Shown piece by piece: positions 6,007-24,275 of a stretch of DNA of 64,000 nucleotides. Where the stretch lies: IMG/VR virus record IMGVR_UViG_3300037086_000360, positions 186,112-250,111 of that record; one strand, given 5' to 3'. The stretch's first letter is position 1. Every line of letters starts with the position of its first letter. The position numbers were made by a program, and so were the translations under genes. The notes beneath the pieces are model-generated. The model saw only the letters and a list, made by a program, of their open reading frames with translations. It made no database searches and had not been told where the DNA came from.

Positions 6007-6534
6007 ATGGAAACCACCACTGTTGAAAAAAAGGTCTTCACCCCCAGGAATTACATTTGCAGCAAGGAGAAATACCTTGAGCTTAGGGCTCTTCAGAAAA
6101 AGACGATCGAAATTGGAAGACTCGATCGTCAGGCCAAGGCTGCATACATCGCTGCTCGTCGTAAGTTTTATCACGACAAGGGCATGACTGCTCCTAACCA
6201 TTGGGGCTACGATGAAAAGAAAAACGTAGCGATTGATTATGACAAGGAAAACGGGTTCAAATACGATGGACTTCAGTCTGGATTTTCCGACAAAGAGAAA
6301 GCCCGTTATTTGAACATCATTTACGGTATTGCCCGTGGAAAACCCTATGATAAAATTGAGCAAAGAATCACTGAGGGCAATGAGATCAGTGAATACCGTG
6401 TAGAGAAGTATTGTAAGCAGTTTGGAATCGATTTCTCCGCGGTAAAGGGTTTTATTTGGCCTTACAACACCGAGAAGGTTCTACCCAAAGATGGACTTGG
6501 CAAGACCACTCTCAAGATCACGAGGAAGGCATAA
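6007..6534 (+). CDS. Conserved phage hypothetical protein
   Basis: AAGGAG RBS; ARYLNIIYGIARGKPYDKIE motif. Confidence 0.65.
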   Translation: METTTVEKKVFTPRNYICSKEKYLELRALQKKTIEIGRLDRQAKAAYIAARRKFYHDKGMTAPNHWGYDEKKNVAIDYDKENGFKYDGLQSGFSDKEKARYLNIIYGIARGKPYDKIEQRITEGNEISEYRVEKYCKQFGIDFSAVKGFIWPYNTEKVLPKDGLGKTTLKITRKA

Positions 6535-6535
6535 A

Positions 6536-6898
6536 ATGGCAGATGAAGTCAAACAGGTGATTGTGGTAAATATGGCCGTTCCATTTCCTCTCGGAAGATT
6601 GATGGCTCAAATTGCTCATGCTTCCATGCTCAACATCGTTAATCGTGGAACTTGGAATGGAGACAAGTTTTCCATTGATGCGGACGATTTGGCCCTAAGA
6701 TTTTGGCTTAAGGATCATTATACAAAAGTCGTATGCAAGGCTTGGGGCAAGGAGCAGATGATGAAGATCAAAGCTGAAGCTGAGAAAAGAAAACTTTACG
6801 TTGCGCTAATGGAGGAAGAGGGGTTTATTACAGCACTCGCTATTGGTCCTGCGGATGTGAAAGATCTTTCTTTCACTGACACTTTAGCATTGGTATGA
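6536..6898 (+). CDS. Divergent Pth2-like protein
   Basis: KQVIVV...GRLMAQIAHAS...YTKVVCK...TALAIGP fits the Pth2 fold; GK is replaced by GR and DAGxT by EEEG. Confidence 0.8.
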   Translation: MADEVKQVIVVNMAVPFPLGRLMAQIAHASMLNIVNRGTWNGDKFSIDADDLALRFWLKDHYTKVVCKAWGKEQMMKIKAEAEKRKLYVALMEEEGFITALAIGPADVKDLSFTDTLALV

Positions 6899-6999: not shown

Positions 7000-7006
7000 T
7001 TTTCTT

Positions 7007-7082
7007 TCCGCTGTAGCTCGAATTTGGCAGAGCGTCTAGTCGAAAGATTAGAAGGTTGGAGGTTCAAGTCCTTCCGGCGGAG
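7007..7082 (+). ncRNA. tRNA-like RNA without an anticodon (GAAA tetraloop)
   Basis: Acceptor TCCGCTG/CGGCGGA, D and T arms nearly identical to 6927..6999; anticodon arm is TCTAGTC-GAAA-GATTAGA. Confidence 0.78.
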
Positions 7083-7105
7083 TTATTTTGCATATGTCTT
7101 TATAT

Positions 7106-7177
7106 CTCTTCGTAGCTCAACGGTAGAGCAAGAATCCCTAAAATTCTAGGTCGCGGGCTCGACACCCGCCGGAGAGG
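7106..7177 (+). tRNA. tRNA with CTA anticodon (amber suppressor-like), atypical C33 and T loop
   Basis: CTCTTCG/CGGAGAG acceptor, G73; AGAAT-CCCTAAA-ATTCT places CTA at 7138-7140; T loop CTCGACA. Confidence 0.72.
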
Positions 7178-7181
7178 CCTT

Positions 7182-7255
7182 GGTCCTGTAGCTCAGATGG
7201 TCAGAGCAACGGATTCTAACCCCGTCGGTCGAGGGTTCGAGCCCCTCCAGGATCT
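7182..7255 (+). tRNA. tRNA with CTA anticodon (amber suppressor-like)
   Basis: GGTCCTG/CAGGATC acceptor; ACGGA-TTCTAAC-CCCGT places CTA at 7216-7218 (A31.C39 mismatch); canonical T loop. Confidence 0.72.
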
Positions 7256-7756
7256 CTAGATAGTTGGATCGTGAAGTTTTTTGATTGCGTATGAGAATGC
7301 GCTATAAAAGTCTTTTGAAGAAACCCACTTATTCCTTAGAATTACCCTTTCACTTTCTTCATCGAAGAAAACACGGATCAAATCTTTAGCATTTTTCAAC
7401 ATCCATTTATCATATCTATGAATTCGTTTTGCCAAGTATGTGTAAGCAATGTCGAACATTAGTTCATAATCTTTTTCAGTTTGTACTGGTGGTAAATCTT
7501 TTTTGACTCTATATGGTCTGAGATTTCTCCACTTACTCGTTGCACTTGGCCAATTTGTTTCAGCAGAATAGCCTCTAATCACACCCTGCGCAAATACCGT
7601 GATTTTGTCATCAGCTACATCAGGATTGCCACTGAAGTCAATGTTTCCATGACTGAGTTGGGCTGGAGTGGTAGTATCTCGCCAACCAAGAGAAATGATA
7701 TCTTTATACGATGGCAACTGTTTGATTTTTTCATGGTCAAAATTGAAATGTTTCAT
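7256..7756 (-). CDS. Hypothetical protein (start MKHFNF)
   Basis: Lone minus-strand gene; a GTAAGATA motif lies just upstream on the minus strand. Confidence 0.65.
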   Translation of the reverse strand: MKHFNFDHEKIKQLPSYKDIISLGWRDTTTPAQLSHGNIDFSGNPDVADDKITVFAQGVIRGYSAETNWPSATSKWRNLRPYRVKKDLPPVQTEKDYELMFDIAYTYLAKRIHRYDKWMLKNAKDLIRVFFDEESERVILRNKWVSSKDFYSAFSYAIKKLHDPTI

Positions 7757-10761: not shown

Positions 10762-12594
10762 ATGAATCAACCAACTCCCAAAGCTCCCAACATGCGTAAA
10801 AATATCGCTATTGTGGCCATACTGCTAATAGGCTATTTTGTTTTTCAGTTTTTTATTGGAGGTGGAACTACTCCAGAAATCAGCTATAGTACTTTTAAAA
10901 AGGCCCTAATTGACGGTAGGATCCAACAAGTTTCTGTTTCAACTACTGAGATCCGTGGAGTAATGAAAGATAAAGAAATTGAGAAGCAGTTTTCAACCAT
11001 TCGCGTAGATGATCCAGAATTGACGAAATTACTCGAATCCAAAAATGTTCAATACTCTGGAAAAATCCAGAGCAACTTCTTATCCAATCTTTTATGGATC
11101 ATAATTCCTTTTGCTCTTCTATATTTCTTTTTCATGCGACAAACTGGTGGAGCGGGCACTAATGTTCTCTCATTTGGAAAGAGTAGGGCGAAACTCAACC
11201 AACCTCTGATTGGAAAAAAGATCTCATTTAAAGATGTCGCTGGAGTTGATGAGGCGAAAGAAGAGCTTCAAGAGGTTGTAGATTTTCTGAAGACTCCCCA
11301 GCGCTTTCAGCAATTGGGTGGAAGAATCCCTCGTGGAATCCTTTTAATTGGAGCTCCTGGCACCGGCAAGACACTTCTTGCAAGGGCGGTCGCCGGAGAG
11401 GCTGGGGTTCCATTTTTCAGTATTTCTGGATCTGAGTTTGTTGAAATGTTTGTAGGAGTTGGAGCTGCGAGAGTAAGAGATCTCTTCGCTCAAGCGATGT
11501 CAAAAGCCCCTTGTATCGTTTTTATCGACGAACTTGATGCCCTGGGAAGAGCTCGAGGATTTTCTCCAGTTGGTGGATTTGATGAGAGAGAGCAAACTCT
11601 CAACCAACTCCTTACAGAGATGGATGGTTTTGATACTCGAGTTGGCATCATCATCATGGCTGCTACGAACAGACCGGAGATTCTTGACTCAGCTCTCATG
11701 AGACCTGGAAGATTTGACCGACAGGTTCTTGTTGATAGGCCAGATCTTGTTGGTCGAGAAGCCATTCTCAAGGTTCATTCAGAAGGGATCAAGATGGCTG
11801 AGAACGTTGATCTCAAAACCATTGCTCAGAGAACTCCAGGATTTGTCGGAGCAGATCTCGCCAACATCATGAATGAGGCAGCCCTTCTTGCTGCAAGACG
11901 CAACAAGACTGAAGTTATGATGGATGAGTTTAGTGAGGCTATCGATCGTGTTGTTGCTGGTCTAGAAAAGAAAAAAAGGCTGATCAGTCCATCAGAGAAG
12001 AAAATTGTGGCTTATCACGAGGCTGGTCATGCCATTGTTTCCCATTTCTCTGGAAAGGGTGATGAAGTCCATAAGATTTCCATTATTCCTCGTGGAATTG
12101 CTGCTCTTGGCTACACAATCAATCTTCCTACAGAAGATCGTTACTTGATGACTCAGAAAGAGCTTGAAGCAAGGCTCGCTACTCTTCTTGGTGGAAGAGT
12201 CGCGGAAGAGCTCTTCATTCAGGACGTTTCCACTGGAGCCTCAAGTGACCTGATGAAGGCAACAGAGATTGCGAAAGCTATGGTCAAAGAATATGGAATG
12301 AGCTCTCTTGGACTTTCTTCTTATGAGAGACCATCAAATCCATTTCTCAAAGATAATTCTTTCTTCCCTTCTGAAAAAGATTATTCAGAAAAAGTAGCGG
12401 CACAAATTGATGAAGAAGTTAAAAACATGCTCATTAAAGCACACGATAAAGCTGTGGTTATCCTTAACACCAAGAAACAGCTTATGGAAGACTTGTCGAA
12501 ACTTCTTCTTGAAAAAGAAGTCGTAGAGAAAGATGAGTTTATAAAACTCATGACAGAAGAGAAGCTGGAAGAATTGCCGCGCGCAGAAGCATAG
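10762..12594 (+). CDS. ftsH: ATP-dependent zinc metalloprotease FtsH
   Basis: Two TM segments, Walker A GAPGTGKT, Walker [37 protein letters not shown]. Confidence 0.98.
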
Positions 12595-13738: not shown

Positions 13739-14836
13739 ATGGATGAATCTGACAAACAAGACCAGGAGTTCCCTCCAGGTACAGTGCCATCGGACCAGTG
13801 GAATGACTGGCGATGGCAAATGCGGAATCGAGTTAAAAACATTGAAGACATTAAGACATTGGGATTATGGAAAGATGACACATTGCCTAATCCAAAGCGT
13901 CTTCCCTTCACGGTAACCCCTTATTATTTGAAAGTCGCTCTCAATTCGAAAGCTCTTCAAAAAACTTTCGTGCCGAACATGAGTGAAAACATTGTGACAT
14001 CTGACTGTACGGATGATCCTCTTGCAGAAGAACATGACTCTCCTGTCAAATGCATCGTACATCGATATCCAGACAGAGTTCTGTTCCTTGCAACAGATCT
14101 TTGTGCTACTTATTGTCGCTATTGTACAAGAAGCCGAGTGATAGAGCAAAATGGATTTACTAAGTCTGAGTGGGAAAAGGGATTCGAATACATCAGAGAA
14201 CACGAAGAAGTTCGAGACGTTCTTATCTCTGGTGGAGACCCTCTCACATATGACGATGATAATCTTGAGTATTTGATTTCAAGCATTAGAGCAATTTCTC
14301 ATGTCGAAATCATAAGAATTGGTACCAAAGTTCCAGTCGTTCTTCCCCAAAGAATAACCCCAGAACTGGTGGCAATGCTTAAGAAGTATCATCCGTTATT
14401 CATGAGCATTCATTTCACCCATCCCGACGAACTCACAGAGGAATGTAAGACTGCATGCTTAATGCTTGCTGATGCAGGAATCCCTCTCGGAAGTCAAACA
14501 GTTTTGTTGAATGATGTGAATGATAATCTCTATATTCTGAAAGCTCTGTTCCAGGGTCTGTTAAAGATTAGAGTTCGCCCCTATTATCTCTATCAGTGTG
14601 ATGTTGTTCAAGGAGCTGCCCATTTTAGAACTCCTTTGGACGTGGGCATCAGGATGATTGAGGGATTAAGAGGATGGACTTCTGGATATGCTGTTCCACA
14701 ATTTGTAATTGACTTACCGAATGGTGGTGGAAAAACACCGGTCATTCCAAATTATGTGGTTGGAACTGAAGGAAAGAACATTGTCTTCAGAAATTATGAG
14801 GGCCAATCCTATCTCTTTCCCGATATAGCATCATGA
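13739..14836 (+). CDS. kamA: KamA-family radical SAM enzyme (lysine 2,3-aminomutase-like)
   Basis: WNDWRWQ, HRYPDR, CATYCRYC (CxxxCxxC), SGGDPL and the PLP-lysine motif GGGKTP. Confidence 0.93.
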   Translation: MDESDKQDQEFPPGTVPSDQWNDWRWQMRNRVKNIEDIKTLGLWKDDTLPNPKRLPFTVTPYYLKVALNSKALQKTFVPNMSENIVTSDCTDDPLAEEHDSPVKCIVHRYPDRVLFLATDLCATYCRYCTRSRVIEQNGFTKSEWEKGFEYIREHEEVRDVLISGGDPLTYDDDNLEYLISSIRAISHVEIIRIGTKVPVVLPQRITPELVAMLKKYHPLFMSIHFTHPDELTEECKTACLMLADAGIPLGSQTVLLNDVNDNLYILKALFQGLLKIRVRPYYLYQCDVVQGAAHFRTPLDVGIRMIEGLRGWTSGYAVPQFVIDLPNGGGKTPVIPNYVVGTEGKNIVFRNYEGQSYLFPDIAS

Positions 14837-16698: not shown

Positions 16699-17117
16699 TG
16701 CGACGATGGCTTACAGCATGGACACCTGAGTTAGCAAGAAAAGAAATGATAGCCAGGGAGCTTAGAAGAACTAGGCCCCTGGTTTCTTTTCCGCTTCTCA
16801 AAAAAGTGTACGACAAATTTGGAATCTTTTGGGTGACAATGCACCATGTTGAAGATATGGATGAACATCTCTGGAGTAAAATGCATGATCTAAATAGACA
16901 TGGACTCTTAGAGCTTTCTGAGTGGAAAAAAGAAATCAATCCAACTCCCTCAAGAGGTCAAAAACTTGCAAACTATTGGAGAGTAACTCCACTTGGTTTG
17001 ATAGCCCTTACAAAATTTTATAGTGTCAAAGATGAAGACGTACACAAAGTTAGCAAATATTTGTTGGACCCAGAAGGAGATAAGAATGAGGCGACTGTCT
17101 TGGCAAAACGATATTGA
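16698..17117 (+). CDS. Hypothetical protein
   Basis: Coupled to the HNH stop. Confidence 0.55.
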   Translation: MRRWLTAWTPELARKEMIARELRRTRPLVSFPLLKKVYDKFGIFWVTMHHVEDMDEHLWSKMHDLNRHGLLELSEWKKEINPTPSRGQKLANYWRVTPLGLIALTKFYSVKDEDVHKVSKYLLDPEGDKNEATVLAKRY

Positions 17118-17697
17118 ACCCGAGATTCCAGACAGAAAATTACCGATAAACAACAATAAAAAAGATGATGATCAACAATTGGTCGAACACATTGATGGTC
17201 ACATTTACTTTTATTCAGATGTGACTTCCCTATCAGTAATTAAACTCAACAAAGTAATAAGAGAAATCACAAACAATATGCTTCCATATAAAGAAGATGG
17301 ATTGGTGTTGAAGCTTCATATCAACAGTGATGGTGGAGTTCTTCTTGATGGACTTGCCGCTCTCGATTCAATTATTTCTAATGCACTTCCCATCCATACC
17401 TATGTAGAAGGTGGAGCTGCCTCAGCCGCCACTCTTATTTCAGTCGCAGGTAAAAAAAGATTCATGCACAGACACTCTTTCATGCTTATCCACCAAATGT
17501 CAAGCAGACTGTGGGGCAAGTATGAGGAGATAAAAGACGACAAAGAAAACTGTGATCGATTCATGAAAATGATCAAGGATATTTACAAGGAATATACAAA
17601 AGTTCCTATGAAAAAGATAGATGAAATTCTCAAACATGATTTGTGGTTTGACGCAGATCAATGTCTTGAATATGGGATGATAGATGAGATAGTCTAG
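17086..17697 (+). CDS. ClpP-like serine protease
   Basis: INSDGG, GGAASAATLI (catalytic Ser), MLIHQ (His), DLWFDADQCLEYGMIDEI. Confidence 0.9.
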   Translation: MRRLSWQNDIEPEIPDRKLPINNNKKDDDQQLVEHIDGHIYFYSDVTSLSVIKLNKVIREITNNMLPYKEDGLVLKLHINSDGGVLLDGLAALDSIISNALPIHTYVEGGAASAATLISVAGKKRFMHRHSFMLIHQMSSRLWGKYEEIKDDKENCDRFMKMIKDIYKEYTKVPMKKIDEILKHDLWFDADQCLEYGMIDEIV

Positions 17698-19013: not shown

Positions 19014-21306
19014 AATCATATTCTTTCTTCTCACAATCTCATCTTTTTCAGCCCAAAGCTCGAATATTGTTCCTCTTGATTTTACTATTAATGAACAATC
19101 TCAAAAAACAATCAACTGCATCATTGTTGATAACCAACTATTGTCTATAGATAGAACAAAGTTGATTGAAGTTGTTCGTCCCATTCTAGATGAATCAACC
19201 TTCTTTAAGCTTCAAAATGAAATAGCAAACAAAGATTTCGTGCCTCCAAAAGATTTAGAGAAATATGGTATTATATCAAAATATGATTCCAATTTGTTGA
19301 AGCTGGAACTAAATATTCCTATTCAAGAACAAAGGGTTCAAGTCCTTAGAATGCCTGGCAGCTCGATTCCAAACTATGTTGCCGCAACTCCAGCAGATTT
19401 CAGTGTCTACCTTAATATGAGAACAACCATGAATCTGCAGACAGCATATGATATCCAAAACTCTATAACCTTGCCCACTCAGCTTATCCTTCAACCTGTG
19501 ATTAACTACAAAGGATGGGTTCTTGATACCAGCGTGACAAGTAGTGTCATTGAGTACCCTAGCATCAGCCTCGATTACGCTAGAGTTGTTCATGATTTTC
19601 CAGACAACTCACAACGACTCACTATTGGTTCCGTCTTTTTCCCAACTACTGCTTTTATGGCACCATTTCCTGCTTATGGAGTTGAGTTCACGCGCAATCC
19701 AATCATGACTCAAGCTCTTCGAAGTCCATATCTCATTCGACAAAGCTTTGAACTTTCTCAGCCATCTGCAGTAAGTATCATACTCAACGATAGAACTCTG
19801 GAGTCCTATCAATTGAATTCAGGCAAATATGTCCTTCCAGATATTCCTTTCATTGGAGGGTTAAATGACTTAGTCATAAATACAAATGGCCAAATAACCC
19901 ATACTGAAGTTTCGTATGATGCGAGACTTCTCGTTGAAAATGACATGTCGTATTCTGTGAACGTAGCAATTCCACAATGGGAGCTACAAGTTCCAATATT
20001 TTCAGGCTATTTCCTGTATGGAATCCTTCCATTTCTAACTGTTGGTGTCAATATGCAGGCAGGACTTGGCCGTCAAATGGAAGGAGTTGAGGCTGTTTAT
20101 TCTACTCCATATGGAAGTGTTCATGGACAGTTTGGATTGAGTGAAAGTCCAATCGATTTTGCGGCAGAAATCGACTATCGACTTGTATTTGCATATGGAA
20201 ATCTCCGTCCTACCGTGACCTTCAGCGCCCAATACACTGGACAAAACTTCTTACTCCCAGGTTTTGATTACAACAGCAACATTTACGCCTGGCTTTTTTC
20301 TGCAAGCTACGGTCAATCTCTTCCATATGGCATTGGGCTTAGCTTGGGGGTTGGATACCAAGTGGGATTGAGTCCAAACCCCGATCAAGCAAGTGCGAAT
20401 ATTACTCTCACAAAACAAATCTTCAAAGATACAAACATAAGTTTGATGTTCACAGTTGCCTACCAAGCAGGCAATCCATTGAAGTTTGAAGGATATTTTG
20501 GTCTAGCTTCTGTTGCACTTGGAGGTAAAGAGACCACCAACTTCAACTCCCAGCTTGATGGGCAATCAGCCTCAGTAAATGCCACCTATCAGCCAAATCA
20601 GAGTCTTCCGATGTTTTCAACTTTCTTGGCAAAGAGTCCAGATTTGAATGGGGCTATTTCGGCGAACTATAATGTGCCATTCACTGAAAGTTCATTGACA
20701 GAATCTTTTTCACCAACAACAAACAGTCTCGTTCTCTCTGCCGGTGTGGCGATTGTAATGGTCGAAGGTCATTTTGGAATCACAAGACCAATCTCAGATA
20801 GTTTTGCTCTCATTATTCCTCAAGACAATATGGCTGGTCAAACTGTCGTTGCAAACAAGCAGGCTGAAACCTATGATGGCATGGCTATGAAAAACTTCAA
20901 CATTGGTCTTTCACAGTTGCCATCCTATACCTTAGATCTAGTGACCCTTAGTTCTCCTACCGCCCCTATAGATACGAACGTGGGAGACAGTATAAGAGTC
21001 ATGAAGCCAACTTACAAGAGTGGAATCGCTCTATTTGTTGGAACAAAGGCAGCAATTTCCATAAAAGGAAAGCTCACATTTAATGGACAGCCTTTCACTT
21101 ATCAATCAGGACAAATCAAAGGAAATACTAGTGTCACCTTTTTCACAGATGAAAATGGAGATTTCGAAGCCTACGGTTTGAGTCCAGGAGATTATCAACT
21201 CACCATCAATGATCTTGAGGGATACAGTCAGAAAATTACAATCCCAATAGCAGCCCCGGCTTCTTATAATATAGGAACGATTGTTGTTCAGGAGAAAAAG
21301 CAATGA
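18982..21306 (+). CDS. Fimbrial usher
   Basis: 774-aa beta-rich protein with usher-like segments (RLTIGS..F, GL.PG.YQL), located between chaperone and adhesin. Confidence 0.85.
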   Translation: MSRLSLIRFVRIIFFLLTISSFSAQSSNIVPLDFTINEQSQKTINCIIVDNQLLSIDRTKLIEVVRPILDESTFFKLQNEIANKDFVPPKDLEKYGIISKYDSNLLKLELNIPIQEQRVQVLRMPGSSIPNYVAATPADFSVYLNMRTTMNLQTAYDIQNSITLPTQLILQPVINYKGWVLDTSVTSSVIEYPSISLDYARVVHDFPDNSQRLTIGSVFFPTTAFMAPFPAYGVEFTRNPIMTQALRSPYLIRQSFELSQPSAVSIILNDRTLESYQLNSGKYVLPDIPFIGGLNDLVINTNGQITHTEVSYDARLLVENDMSYSVNVAIPQWELQVPIFSGYFLYGILPFLTVGVNMQAGLGRQMEGVEAVYSTPYGSVHGQFGLSESPIDFAAEIDYRLVFAYGNLRPTVTFSAQYTGQNFLLPGFDYNSNIYAWLFSASYGQSLPYGIGLSLGVGYQVGLSPNPDQASANITLTKQIFKDTNISLMFTVAYQAGNPLKFEGYFGLASVALGGKETTNFNSQLDGQSASVNATYQPNQSLPMFSTFLAKSPDLNGAISANYNVPFTESSLTESFSPTTNSLVLSAGVAIVMVEGHFGITRPISDSFALIIPQDNMAGQTVVANKQAETYDGMAMKNFNIGLSQLPSYTLDLVTLSSPTAPIDTNVGDSIRVMKPTYKSGIALFVGTKAAISIKGKLTFNGQPFTYQSGQIKGNTSVTFFTDENGDFEAYGLSPGDYQLTINDLEGYSQKITIPIAAPASYNIGTIVVQEKKQ

Positions 21307-22214
21307 AATCACGAATCATTTTAATCTTGTTGATGTTTATGTCTCTTTCAATTGGAGCCCAGACATTAACTTTTTCAGTTCCTCCAGGAAATCCTACTGG
21401 AACCTATTCTCCTGATACTGGTGTTACTATAGTTAGCACAATGACTATTCGGCATACTGGAGCCGCTTGTAGCTATTTTATCACTTTTGCTTCTGGATCA
21501 TCTGGAACCTTCACATCAAGAACAGCAAAAAGTGGTGCCAACATTCTCAACTATCAAATCTATGACAACATAACCAATAAAAATGTTCTCGAGGATTTGA
21601 CAGCGAGTCCAACATCTGCAAATGTGTTGAGTGGTTCTTTCGCAGCAGGAACTGCGACTCAGGTCCAAACATTCACAAGCTATGTTGCAACAACACAACT
21701 TCCTCCGGTTGGAACCTACACAGATGCTATAAGAATGGACATTTATATTGGAACAATAGCCGCTCACGGGGCATCTGTCAGAAATCGTACCTTCACAGAA
21801 ACCATGACTGTTCCAACTCTTCTCGACATATGCCTCGTTCCAACCGGTTCGTCCTTCAATGTTGCAAGCACTTCTACCACTTTCAACTTTGGAACTCTTT
21901 CAACTGGACAAAATCTTGGTGATGATTTCATGGTGAGATCTAATGGATTAAACACAGTGAAGGTCACTTCTACAAATGGACAAGTGTTAAAGAATGCTAT
22001 TAGTGGAGATATTAGTTCAGTTCCATATATCTTTGCTGTTAATGCTGTTGCATACACACTACCAGCCGCCACTGCTGTAACCATCATAGCGAGTCAACCA
22101 GCAACTGTAGCGACTGGAAAGCGATACCCAATTCTAGTAACCATAGGCACCATAGGGTGGGTCAGTGCGGCCACATATACAGACACGATCACTTTTACCG
22201 CAACTGCAAACTAG
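21303..22214 (+). CDS. Two-domain tip pilin/adhesin (CsuE-like)
   Basis: Signal peptide; LNYQIYD, PVGTYTDAI and ATYTDTITF spore-coat-U-like motifs in two domains. Confidence 0.8.
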   Translation: MKSRIILILLMFMSLSIGAQTLTFSVPPGNPTGTYSPDTGVTIVSTMTIRHTGAACSYFITFASGSSGTFTSRTAKSGANILNYQIYDNITNKNVLEDLTASPTSANVLSGSFAAGTATQVQTFTSYVATTQLPPVGTYTDAIRMDIYIGTIAAHGASVRNRTFTETMTVPTLLDICLVPTGSSFNVASTSTTFNFGTLSTGQNLGDDFMVRSNGLNTVKVTSTNGQVLKNAISGDISSVPYIFAVNAVAYTLPAATAVTIIASQPATVATGKRYPILVTIGTIGWVSAATYTDTITFTATAN

Positions 22215-23693: not shown

Positions 23694-23968
23694 GGGGCCG
23701 TAAAGGTTTCGACTGAACAGTGTTGGGCTTAGCCGAAGTTTTTCTACAAAATAGACGCGAATAACTTCGCTCTCGCGGCATAGCCGCTCACCTAACGGCA
23801 TTTAGTTTTTTGCTTCTAGCTGTTGGGTAACAAAAAGCAAAGAACGGGTTCATTCAATGAAACTCCCGTAAAAAAGCGAATTGTGGTATTTAGAATCCAC
23901 CACTCTACGGTTCTACGGCAGGCGAAGGTCCTTTGTTCAGGACGGGATTTCGATTATCCCCGGCTCCA
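23694..23968 (+). ncRNA. ssrA: tmRNA, 275 nt, tag (A)ANNFALAA*
   Basis: GGGGCCG...TTCGAC 5' end; GGGAT-TTCGATT-ATCCC-CGGCTCC-A 3' end with G3.U70; AAAATAGAC upstream of GCG AAT AAC TTC GCT CTC GCG GCA TAG (23757-23783). Confidence 0.92.
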
Positions 23969-23977
23969 TTTCCAGAC

Positions 23978-24010
23978 ACCTCCAGCACATAGTATGTTGG
24001 AGGTTTTTTT
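23978..24010 (+). terminator. Terminator downstream of ssrA
   Basis: ACCTCCAGCA...TGTTGGAGGT followed by TTTTTT. Confidence 0.8.
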
Positions 24011-24275
24011 GATCATTTTCACGGAAATGATTGATAAGATAGTTGAAGTTATACTTTTCTAGAGGAGTCTGATTTGACGCGCACTAAAACCTTGAAGAGA
24101 TATGTTGTTATCTACAAAAAATCGCAAAAAACAGATGACCCCACAGAACAGGAAGATCTTCTAGCTAAACTTGATGATCTATATTATGAGCTGAGCGACG
24201 AAGATATGGAGTACGTTGAAAGACACGAAATGCTGCCTTAGTGTAAGATAAATATAAAACTGTGGGAGAAAAAGA

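What the first reader, a model, noticed from the sequence alone, without database searches (positions are those of the whole stretch)
23694..23968. Short tmRNA whose degron ends in TAG, a possible suppressor-controlled switch
Seen: 275 nt, well below the usual 350 or so; the tag ANNFALAA ends at TAG, followed by CCG CTC ACC TAA. Known: the free C-terminal AA is required for ClpX recognition. Inference: read-through by the phage CUA tRNAs would give ...ALAA-X-PLT and mask the degron, so rescue could be switched from degradative to non-degradative.
Basis: partly seen in the sequence, partly recalled or inferred. Interest (0 to 1): 0.7.

Follow-up and report, generated by a model that had tools for sequence, protein, structure and literature searches.

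The report
Short phage tmRNA ending in TAG
A giant peat-soil phage carries its own unusually short, expressed ribosome-rescue RNA (tmRNA) whose degradation tag ends at a TAG stop, but comparison with related phages suggests that this TAG is an ordinary stop codon rather than a switch worked by the phage's amber-suppressor tRNAs.

Summary
Window 23694-23968 (+) is a 275-nt tmRNA. ARAGORN and Rfam (60.6 bits, cut-off 47) both call it. The tag is ANNFALAA, then TAG, then CCG CTC ACC TAA. Two tRNA-CUA genes lie 16.5 kb upstream.

The RNA belongs to a clade of 273-275-nt tmRNAs found at the same gene position in five huge-phage contigs. G3.U70 is invariant and 24 of 43 pairs show compensatory changes. 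In three peat metatranscriptomes it is the deepest feature of its neighbourhood.

The "suppressor-controlled switch" is not supported:
- TAG is a normal stop here, ending about 35% of genes.
- TAG exchanges with TAA and TGA between orthologues.
- I found no in-frame TAG, and backup stops are not enriched after TAG.
- Two other huge phages with a tRNA-CUA (G009, G003) end their tags in TAA, and one with a TAG-ended tag (G032) has no tRNA-CUA.
- A TAA or TGA within three codons follows 12% of TAG-ended genes.

In its favour, the nearest relative (a 732-kb contig) keeps TAG-PLT-TAA and both CUA tRNAs, whose stems show compensatory changes. Some read-through giving ...ALAA-X-PLT therefore remains physically plausible and untested.

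Verdict: a phage-encoded minimal tmRNA, a variant of a known kind. The switch remains a low-probability hypothesis.

The parts
23694..23968 (+). tmRNA (ssrA) gene, 275 nt, one-piece
   Evidence: ARAGORN. Rfam RF00023 60.6 bits against a cut-off of 47. MFE z-score -3.87. Five-sequence alignment with 24 of 43 pairs changed on both sides. Deepest RNA-contig feature of its neighbourhood in three metatranscriptomes.
23694..23700 (+). Acceptor stem, 5' strand GGGGCCG. It pairs with 23961-23967 (CGGCTCC) and contains G3.U70. The discriminator A is at 23968. No CCA is encoded.
   Evidence: G3.U70 is invariant in 5 of 5 sequences, and pairs 5 and 6 covary.
23944..23960 (+). T-arm: GGGAT / TTCGATT / ATCCC
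   Evidence: all five stem pairs show compensatory changes among the relatives. The loop is canonical in the window and deviant in the relatives.
23757..23780 (+). Tag reading frame, A N N F A L A A, with resume codon GCG
   Evidence: Relatives encode ANTFALAA, DNFALAA and ADAELALAA.
23781..23783 (+). TAG stop of the tag. U and A lie in the loop and G is the first base of the 3' strand of hairpin 23775-23787 (GCGGC AUA GCCGC).
   Evidence: The stop is also TAG in the 732-kb relative, and no differences were listed over the tag, TAG or TAA in a variant RNA contig of run X8.
23784..23795 (+). CCG CTC ACC TAA: the in-frame continuation (P L T) and next stop. It lies in the 5' strand of the next helix.
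   Evidence: The stretch is identical in the 732-kb relative. Its position in a helix means the conservation cannot be read as coding.
23978..24011 (+). Terminator-like hairpin plus a run of seven T, 10 nt after the tmRNA 3' end
7106..7179 (+). tRNA with anticodon CUA, loop CC-CUA-AA (C33), discriminator G
   Evidence: (54.2 bits). The orthologue in the 732-kb relative keeps C33 and CUA while its anticodon stem has changed on both strands.
7182..7256 (+). tRNA with anticodon CUA, canonical loop UU-CUA-AC, discriminator U
   Evidence: (61.1 bits). The orthologue in the relative has a compensated anticodon stem.
7006..7083 (+). tRNA-like gene with an 8-nt anticodon loop, in the same cluster
   Evidence: (40.9 bits). 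An orthologue is present in the relative.
6491..6898 (+). PTH2-family peptidyl-tRNA hydrolase gene next to the tRNA cluster
   Evidence: Pfam PF01981, E 2.3e-15. The arrangement is the same in the relative.
10762..12594 (+). FtsH homologue (AAA + M41 protease), a possible degrader of tagged proteins
   Evidence: Pfam. 67-70% identical to FtsH of Spirochaetia MAGs.
17023..17697 (+). ClpP-family serine protease homologue. It could be either a prohead protease or a ClpP.

Best explanation
This is a working, phage-encoded, minimal one-piece tmRNA.

Shown:
- It has the tRNA-like domain with the alanine identity pair G3.U70.
- It has a resume codon in the usual A-rich context and an 8-codon tag ending in the canonical ALAA degron.
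- Its stop codon sits in the hairpin that closes the tag frame.
- It belongs to a conserved clade of 273-275-nt tmRNAs at one gene position in huge phages.
- It is present at high depth in RNA libraries from peat.

Inferred:
- During infection it is charged by the host AlaRS and delivered by host SmpB and EF-Tu; the contig encodes no SmpB.
- It frees ribosomes stalled on broken or stop-less mRNAs.
- It marks the products for degradation by host ClpXP and Lon, and perhaps by the phage's own FtsH and ClpP homologues.

The TAG is the normal terminator of the tag, used because TAG is a common, genuine stop in this genome. The TAA three codons further on is a chance or structural feature. If the phage's CUA tRNAs are active, they will extend a fraction of tags to ...ALAA-X-PLT. 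That would be the same collateral read-through that a third of the phage's own genes would suffer, not a dedicated control.
For: The tmRNA call:
- Identity rests.
- The anatomy rests.
- The clade and its covariation rest.
- Expression: the RNA-contig word depth on the tmRNA gene is 52.7, 22.1 and 11-19 (runs X3, X4, X8). Most of the neighbourhood is at 0-16 (up to 19 in the other stretch laid). The DNA run is flat at 3-5.
- A terminator-like hairpin follows the gene.

TAG is an ordinary stop:
- Stop use in genes of 100 aa or more is TAG 101, TAA 100, TGA 84.
- Many TAG stops are followed by an SD and ATG of the next gene, as in TAGGAG...ATG.
- Orthologue comparison gives TAG-TAG 4, TAG-TAA 2, TAG-TGA 1 and no TAG against a sense codon.
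- Coding density does not rise specifically when TAG is read as sense.
- The next stop lies within 5 codons after 31% of TAG, 29% of TAA and 31% of TGA genes.
- The relative's TerL (985 aa with an intein) and its 23-kb surroundings are uninterrupted in the standard code, with 96% coverage.

No TAG-CUA association:
- G009 and G003 have a tRNA-CUA and a TAA-ended tag.
- G032 has a TAG-ended tag and no tRNA-CUA.
- G035 and G036 have neither.

The ALAA directly before the stop is kept in all five clade members. This fits termination at that stop being the functional outcome.

Background from papers: huge phages are known to carry tmRNAs (PMC7162821; PMC4131195). Phage G has a 308-nt tmRNA, a suppressor tRNA and ClpXP (PMC12484599).
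Against: - TAG is a minority choice for tmRNA tags: 1 of 32 in Spirochaetota and 7 of 52 unique IMG/VR examples. Its presence exactly in a lineage with two conserved CUA tRNAs may not be chance.
- TAG plus CCG CTC ACC TAA is identical in the 732-kb relative, and no differences were listed there in a third variant.
- The contig lacks the structural module (no TerL). Strong late suppression for unseen recoded genes is therefore not excluded for this phage.
- No function has been shown for the CUA tRNAs. They were not seen in RNA contigs, which is inconclusive.
- My gene calls are a crude greedy ORF set, not a trained gene finder.
- PK1 was not verified.
Confidence: 0.7

Rival explanations
1. The CUA tRNAs, when expressed, read the tag's TAG. 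The tag then becomes ANNFALAA-X-PLT, the Ala-Ala-COO- end is buried, and rescue turns from degradative to non-degradative, for example late in infection.
For: - TAG, PLT and TAA, and both CUA tRNAs, are conserved in the nearest relative. The tRNA stems are compensated and the anticodon is kept.
- TAG is rare in the tmRNAs of the presumptive host phylum, 1 of 32.
- ClpX needs the terminal Ala-Ala and the carboxylate (PMC7652416).
- The structural genes of this phage are unseen.
Against: - G009 and G003 carry a tRNA-CUA with TAA-ended tags, and G032 has TAG without a tRNA-CUA.
- TAG ends about 35% of the phage's own genes, with no extra backup stops after it.
- TAG swaps with TAA and TGA in orthologues.
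- Neither 250 kb of this phage nor about 58 kb of the relative, TerL included, shows recoding.
- A close second stop occurs by chance in 12-22% of cases.
- The PLT-TAA stretch lies in a helix, so its conservation is structural.
- The window and its relative count as one evolutionary event.
Confidence: 0.12
2. The link runs the other way. The phage's amber suppressors make ribosomes run through TAG stops into 3' ends, which creates stop-less complexes. The phage tmRNA, with the PTH2 and RF-1-domain genes, is carried to clear them.
For: - Suppressor tRNAs are known to provoke trans-translation through read-through (Ueda et al. 2002, as cited in PMC3985003).
- The genome ends a third of its genes in TAG.
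- It carries two CUA tRNAs, a PTH2 gene beside them and an RF-1-domain ORF.
- The same co-occurrence is reported for phage G (PMC12484599), and G009 and G003 show it too.
Against: - tmRNAs also occur in huge phages without a tRNA-CUA, such as G035, G036 and G032.
- A TAG-ended tag would itself be read through, which is odd for a device meant to mop up amber read-through.
- The RF-1-domain ORF has GGM in place of GGQ.
Confidence: 0.15
3. The RNA is a decoy or a remnant. Either it is a tRNA-like domain that titrates host SmpB and blocks host trans-translation, as proposed for the TLD-only gene of mycobacteriophage DS6A, or it is a left-over attachment-site fragment of a host ssrA gene.
For: - Phage TLD-only molecules exist and may inhibit tmRNA (PMC4131195).
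- The contig has no SmpB gene.
- The T-loops of the relatives depart from the consensus.
- The pseudoknot region is reduced.
Against: - The gene is complete, with both acceptor strands, and the tag frame is intact.
- The ALAA end is conserved in five contigs despite many substitutions elsewhere.
- It sits at the same gene position inside huge-phage genomes, not at a prophage border.
- It is abundant in RNA libraries.
Confidence: 0.03

Closest known systems
Bacterial one-piece tmRNA (SsrA; Rfam RF00023)
   Same: - A tRNA-like domain with G3.U70 and a T-arm.
- A long helix 2.
- A resume codon after an A-rich stretch (AAAAUAGAC|GCG, against E. coli AAAAAUAGUC|GCA as I recall it).
- A short tag ending in ALAA.
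- A stop codon in the hairpin that closes the frame.
- The tag is close to the Spirochaetota tags ANDNFALAA and ANNNGNFALAA.
   Different: - 275 nt against about 335-385 nt in 141 Spirochaetota genomes. The Rfam alignment shows large deletions in the pseudoknot 2-4 region.
- The Rfam score is only just over the cut-off. Two clade members fall below it: L130 was not listed and G009 scored 41.7 bits.
- The stop is TAG, where 30 of 32 Spirochaetota tags use TAA.
- It is encoded by a virus with no SmpB gene on the contig.
tmRNAs of huge phages and of cultured phages (Bacillus phage G, 308 nt; mycobacteriophages of the Bxz1 group; Al-Shayeb et al. 2020)
   Same: A phage-borne ssrA gene in a genome rich in tRNAs and other translation genes. 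Phage G likewise combines a tmRNA, a suppressor tRNA and Clp proteases (PMC12484599; PMC4131195; PMC7162821).
   Different: - It is shorter than phage G's tmRNA.
- It has a canonical ALAA tag, where phage G has AKLNITNNELQVA.
- The suppressors here are amber (CUA), matching the tag's own stop, whereas phage G's is UUA.
- No close sequence relative was found in GenBank phages or IMG/VR.
Stop-codon-recoded phages with suppressor tRNAs (code 15; Lak and crAss-like phages; Borges et al. preprint 10.1101/2021.08.26.457843)
   Same: Phage-encoded tRNA-CUA genes. That work also reports suppressor tRNAs in standard-code relatives of recoded phages.
   Different: I found no in-frame TAG. TAG is not depleted but is the commonest stop in long genes. 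That model expects the reassigned stop codon to be rare before recoding.

Membership tests
tmRNA (RF00023) | Score at or above the curated Rfam gathering score | tested here: met
   60.6 bits against 47. Clade members: L131 54.1 and L211 62.1. G009 scored 41.7 and L130 was not listed at the gathering score, so both fall below it.
tmRNA (RF00023) | tRNA-like domain: a 7-bp acceptor stem with G3.U70 (alanine identity) and a T-arm | tested here: met
   G3.U70 is invariant in 5 of 5 sequences. Acceptor pairs 5 and 6 and all five T-stem pairs covary. The window's T-loop is TTCGATT.
tmRNA (RF00023) | Tag reading frame with a resume codon, a hydrophobic C-terminal degron and a canonical stop | tested here: met
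   ANNFALAA followed by TAG. The ALAA end is conserved in all five clade members.
tmRNA (RF00023) | Long helix 2 joining the tRNA-like and mRNA-like parts | tested here: met
   Columns 20-26/246-252 and 34-41/233-240 pair, with compensatory changes.
tmRNA (RF00023) | Pseudoknot 1 upstream of the resume codon | tested here: inconclusive
   The folding tools used predict no pseudoknots. The stretch 23721-23756 has small hairpins only. The Rfam alignment there has low posterior probability.
tmRNA (RF00023) | Pseudoknots 2-4 downstream of the tag | tested here: not met
   The Rfam alignment shows large deletions across this part. About 100 nt are missing relative to the 374-position model. From my own knowledge, these pseudoknots are not essential for tagging in E. 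coli, so I do not treat this as excluding membership.
tmRNA (RF00023) | Works with SmpB, AlaRS and EF-Tu; tags nascent chains | not testable with these tools
   No SmpB was found on the 250-kb contig, so host factors would be needed. Presence in RNA libraries shows expression only.
Stop-codon-recoded (code 15) phage | In-frame TAG codons in genes, and a rise in coding density when TAG is read as sense | tested here: not met
   for this contig, and for the relative's TerL region. The structural genes of this phage itself are not on the contig.
Amber suppressor tRNA | Cloverleaf with anticodon CUA, kept under selection | tested here: met
   The orthologues in the relative have compensated stems and an unchanged CUA. 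One of the two has C33 instead of U33.
Amber suppressor tRNA | Aminoacylated, and decodes UAG on the ribosome | not testable with these tools
   The identity could not be assigned: there is no close paralogue among the 63 tRNAs. RNA contigs do not cover the genes.

The most novel reading that the evidence does not exclude
In this lineage of roughly 0.7-Mb peat phages, the tmRNA tag is deliberately ended by the one stop codon that the phage's own two amber-suppressor tRNAs can read. As the suppressors accumulate, rescued proteins receive ...ALAA-X-PLT instead of ...ALAA and escape ClpXP. Ribosome rescue would then be uncoupled from proteolysis in a timed way. This would be the first natural case of a tmRNA degron regulated by stop-codon suppression.
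Probability: 0.1. Interest if true: 0.75.

Novelty: new variant of a known kind. Interest (0 to 1): 0.35.

Why it matters
Phage-borne tmRNAs are known, but it is not known why phages carry them.

This clade shows how far a tmRNA can be trimmed, to about 275 nt, while keeping the tRNA-like domain, helix 2, the tag and its closing hairpin. It is also abundant in environmental RNA, which gives a compact natural template for studying the minimal requirements of trans-translation.

The gene sits in a genome that also carries 63 tRNAs, two conserved amber suppressors, a PTH2 hydrolase, an RF-1-domain protein, FtsH, a ClpP homologue and DnaK. That points to a virus bringing much of its own translation quality control.

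The TAG-plus-suppressor combination gives a cheap, clear experiment on whether stop-codon suppression can modulate a degron. On present evidence, though, the combination is best read as coincidence within a TAG-rich genome.

Tried and rejected
Searches that found nothing or hit a limit:
- DNA search of the tmRNA neighbourhood against GenBank phages: no match.
- Three exact or degenerate tmRNA patterns in IMG/VR and one in JGI metagenomes: no match.
- The 5' 20-mer pattern found only unrelated tmRNAs. I used them as a background sample.
- A single-protein locus search with the neighbouring ATPase: none. The alignment-based search found only distant relatives.
- The 732-kb relative could not be searched as a whole record. 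I reached its tRNA cluster and its TerL region through neighbouring proteins instead.
The host hint therefore rests on names in the protein database and on tag similarity.
- DnaK and a histidine-kinase protein were tried as markers for related phages and proved uninformative.

Inconclusive:
- Laying RNA contigs on the CUA tRNA cluster, because short tRNAs are not assembled.
- Assigning an amino-acid identity to the CUA tRNAs by similarity to the other 61 tRNAs: no close paralogue.

Considered and rejected:
- TAG recoding of this contig.
- An in-frame TAG in the ClpP homologue suggested: the frame is open through the domain.
- An attachment-site fragment: the gene is complete, sits at a conserved gene position and is expressed.
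- Rfam's placement of the consensus stop loop on the second stop: the alternative hairpin GCGGC-AUA-GCCGC puts TAG at the canonical place and is the one predicted by folding.

Full report
- ARAGORN reports a tmRNA at window 23694-23968 on the + strand, 275 nt, with tag ANNFALAA*.
- Rfam's tmRNA model matches 23694-23971 at 60.6 bits, above its gathering score of 47 (E 3e-21).
- In the sequence the frame runs GCG AAT AAC TTC GCT CTC GCG GCA (23757-23780), TAG (23781-23783), CCG CTC ACC (23784-23792), TAA (23793-23795).
- The window also holds two tRNA genes with anticodon CUA at 7106-7179 and 7182-7256 (Rfam tRNA 54.2 and 61.1 bits). A tRNA-like gene with an 8-nt anticodon loop lies just before them at 7006-7083.

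**2. What carries it?**
- The window is the last 64 kb of a 250,111-bp IMG/VR virus record. Sequencing runs that hold it are peat metagenomes.
- The record has 63 tRNA genes and this one tmRNA.
- It also encodes a DnaB-like helicase, a primase, a DnaE-like polymerase in two ORFs, DnaK, FtsH, a ClpP-family protease, a PTH2 peptidyl-tRNA hydrolase and a 132-aa RF-1-domain protein whose motif reads GGM rather than GGQ.
- No SmpB gene was found. No large terminase was found either.
- The nearest relative has neighbouring proteins 83-84% identical and lies on a 732,019-bp contig. That contig does carry a TerL of 985 aa, with an intein.
- The 250-kb record is therefore probably about a third of a much larger genome, and its structural genes are unseen, whatever CheckV's 88% says.
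- The FtsH is 67-70% identical to FtsH of MAGs named Spirochaetia. Spirochaetota tmRNA tags such as ANDNFALAA, ANNNGNFALAA and ANNELALAA resemble the phage tag. A spirochaete host is a reasonable guess, not a result.

**3. Anatomy of the RNA**
- The ends pair as GGGGCCG/CGGCUCC with G3.U70, followed by discriminator A. CCA is not encoded.
- The T-arm is GGGAU-UUCGAUU-AUCCC (23944-23960).
- The resume codon follows AAAAUAGAC, much like the E. coli context as I recall it.
- The last tag codons and the stop form the hairpin GCGGC-AUA-GCCGC (23775-23787). TAG therefore sits where tmRNA stops usually sit.
- The TAA lies in the 5' strand of the next helix. Rfam instead aligned its consensus stop loop to the TAA, with low posterior probability. 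The two hairpins are mutually exclusive, and folding prefers the first.
- The Rfam alignment shows that the shortening is in the pseudoknot 2-4 region.
- A terminator-like hairpin with seven T follows 10 nt after the gene.

**4. A clade of short phage tmRNAs.** I searched with the 799-aa ATPase that lies 1.3 kb downstream. This found tmRNAs at the same gene position in four more contigs:

| Contig | tmRNA length | Tag and stop |
|---|---|---|
| 732-kb relative | 274 nt | ANTFALAA, then TAG CCG CTC ACC TAA (identical continuation) |
| Logan contig L131 | 273 nt | ADAELALAA, TAA |
| Logan contig L211 | 274 nt | ADAELALAA, TAA |
| G009 (388-kb IMG/VR genome) | 274 nt | DNFALAA, TAA |

- In the five-sequence alignment G3.U70 is invariant, and 24 of 43 predicted pairs keep pairing through changes on both sides.
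- More distant genomes with the same gene order lack the tmRNA at that spot.
- By comparison, 141 Spirochaetota tmRNAs are nearly all about 335-385 nt, and 67 tmRNAs on IMG/VR contigs are 312 nt or longer.

**5. Expression**
- In three peat metatranscriptomes the assembled RNA contigs over the tmRNA gene have the highest depth of the two stretches examined: 52.7 in X3, 22.1 in X4 and 11-19 in X8.
- Most surrounding genes sit at 0-16, and the highest elsewhere is 19. A DNA run is flat at 3-5.
- One X8 contig is a variant with 12 differences. The ones listed all lie at 23798-23858, and none is listed in the tag, the TAG or the TAA.
- The CUA tRNA genes are not covered by RNA contigs. This says little, because tRNAs are too short to be assembled.

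**6. Is TAG special in this genome?** No.
- A simple greedy ORF call gives stops TAG 101, TAA 100, TGA 84 for genes of 100 aa or more. TAG is the commonest stop among genes of 150 aa or more.
- Many TAG stops are followed at once by a Shine-Dalgarno sequence and the ATG of the next gene, often as TAGGAG.
- Reading TAG as sense does not raise coding density more than doing the same for TAA or TGA.
- Between the window and 35.6 kb of the 732-kb relative, orthologous stops pair as TAG-TAG four times, TAG-TAA twice and TAG-TGA once. TAG never pairs with a sense codon.
- The relative's TerL and the 23 kb around it are uninterrupted in the standard code, with 96% coverage and stops TGA 22, TAA 14, TAG 10.
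- If read-through of TAG were frequent, one would expect backup stops close behind TAG. The next stop lies within five codons after 31% of TAG, 29% of TAA and 31% of TGA genes.
- A TAA or TGA within three codons follows 12% of TAG genes. The tmRNA's own backup TAA is therefore unremarkable.

**7. Are the CUA tRNAs real?** They look functional and selected.
- The 732-kb relative has the same cluster: a PTH2 gene, odd tRNAs with enlarged anticodon loops, then two tRNA-CUA genes.
- In both CUA tRNAs the anticodon stem differs on both strands while the pairing, the CUA and, in the first, the unusual C33 are kept.
- Their amino-acid identity could not be inferred.

**8.

| Genome | tRNA-CUA genes | Tag stop | Share of stops that are TAG |
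|---|---|---|---|
| This phage | 2 | TAG | 35% |
| 732-kb relative | 2 | TAG | not measured genome-wide |
| G009 | 1 | TAA | 13% |
| G003 | 1 | TAA | 17% |
| G032 | 0 | TAG TGA | 20% |
| G035 | 0 | TAA | 10% |
| G036 | 0 | TAA | 10% |

- Counting the window and its close relative as one lineage, TAG occurs in one of three lineages with a tRNA-CUA and in one of three without.
- The tag's stop tracks how common TAG is as a stop in the genome, not the presence of a suppressor.
- TAG-ended tags are a minority everywhere but are not unique: 1 of 32 in Spirochaetota and 7 of 52 unique sequences in IMG/VR.

**9. How it most likely works**
- Shown: a complete, conserved, transcribed tmRNA gene with an alanine identity pair and a canonical ALAA degron.
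- Inferred from what is established for tmRNA (PMC8012679; PMC4131195):
  - It is charged with alanine and delivered with host SmpB and EF-Tu to ribosomes stalled on broken or stop-less messages, which are likely to be plentiful in an infected cell.
  - Translation resumes at GCG and adds (A)ANNFALAA. Release at UAG by RF1 frees the ribosome.
  - The product is degraded by ClpXP or Lon, and possibly by the phage's own FtsH and ClpP homologues.
- ALAA stands immediately before the stop in all five clade members. This argues that ending there is the selected outcome.
- If the CUA tRNAs decode UAG, a fraction of tags will read ...ALAA-X-PLT. By the E. coli rules (PMC7652416) these would escape ClpX. 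A third of the phage's own proteins would be extended in the same way, so this looks like collateral read-through rather than a device.
- A reverse link is also plausible. Suppressor-driven read-through is known to create substrates for trans-translation (Ueda et al. 2002, cited in PMC3985003), so a phage with suppressors may profit from extra rescue capacity.

**10. Comparison with what is known.** Phage tmRNAs are established:
- mycobacteriophages and Bacillus phage G (PMC4131195);
- huge phages (PMC7162821);
- phage G with a 308-nt tmRNA, a suppressor tRNA and ClpXP (PMC12484599).

Suppressor tRNAs in standard-code phages are also reported (preprint 10.1101/2021.08.26.457843). What is new here is a distinct, strongly shortened subfamily that sits at or below Rfam's threshold. 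In one lineage, its tag stop matches the resident suppressors. In the papers I searched I found no proposal that a tmRNA tag is regulated by suppression.

**11. Verdict**
- The finding is a new variant of a known kind and is of moderate interest.
- The switch keeps a probability of about 0.1 and can be tested with a simple reporter experiment.

**12. Limits**
- Gene calls are from a simple ORF heuristic.
- The sample for the association test is six genomes in five lineages.
- The phage's late genes are not on the contig.
- RNA evidence comes from assembled contigs, which show presence, not ends or amounts.
- Pseudoknots were not modelled.

Noticed in passing
window 7006-7083; L134:5859-5940 and L134:5945-6022; G009 298666-298738: tRNA-like genes with 8-nt anticodon loops lie directly upstream of the CUA tRNAs: UCGAAAGA in the window and UCGAGAGA in the 732-kb relative. 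A further one is in G009. They may be quadruplet-decoding or frameshift-suppressor tRNAs. The cluster of odd tRNAs plus amber suppressors is conserved.
   Followed up: partly
window 6491-6898: A PTH2-family peptidyl-tRNA hydrolase gene abuts the suppressor tRNA cluster in both this phage and the 732-kb relative.
   Followed up: partly
genome 142550-142948 (L018:1450-1848): A 132-aa RF-1-domain ORF, about the size of ArfB, carries GGM where the catalytic GGQ is expected.
   Followed up: partly
whole record, G000 1-250111: The record has no large terminase and no recognisable structural genes, while the relative at 83-84% protein identity is a 732-kb contig with an intein-bearing TerL. The record is probably a fragment of a roughly 0.7-Mb genome, despite CheckV's 88%.
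   Followed up: partly
genome 21171-23474 and 31660-33708 (L009): The DnaE-like DNA polymerase III alpha is split into two ORFs 8 kb apart. They match the N-terminal and C-terminal parts of the same PHROG. A homing-endonuclease-like gene lies between them.
   Followed up: no
genome 52153-55260, 151897-153798, 154259-156187: Three paralogous proteins resemble hybrid sensor histidine kinases with receiver domains. This is unusual cargo for a phage.
   Followed up: no
window 10762-12594: A full-length FtsH (extracellular domain, AAA and M41) is 67-70% identical to FtsH of Spirochaetia MAGs. This suggests recent capture from the host lineage.
   Followed up: partly
genome-wide, e.g. genome 62863, 156185, 236281: TAG stops often double as the start of the next gene's Shine-Dalgarno sequence (TAGGAG...ATG). 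This may help explain why TAG is so frequent a stop here.
   Followed up: partly
L130:7284-7557, L131:8040-8312, L201:6841-7114 (-): The T-loops of the relatives' short tmRNAs depart from the canonical TTCGATT kept in the window, reading for example GUCAGUA and UGCAAGU. Two of these tmRNAs fall below Rfam's gathering score.
   Followed up: no
window 13739-14836 and 21303-22214: A radical-SAM lysine-2,3-aminomutase-like gene (from its orthologue in the relative) and a protein with a spore-coat-protein-U domain lie near the tmRNA.
   Followed up: no
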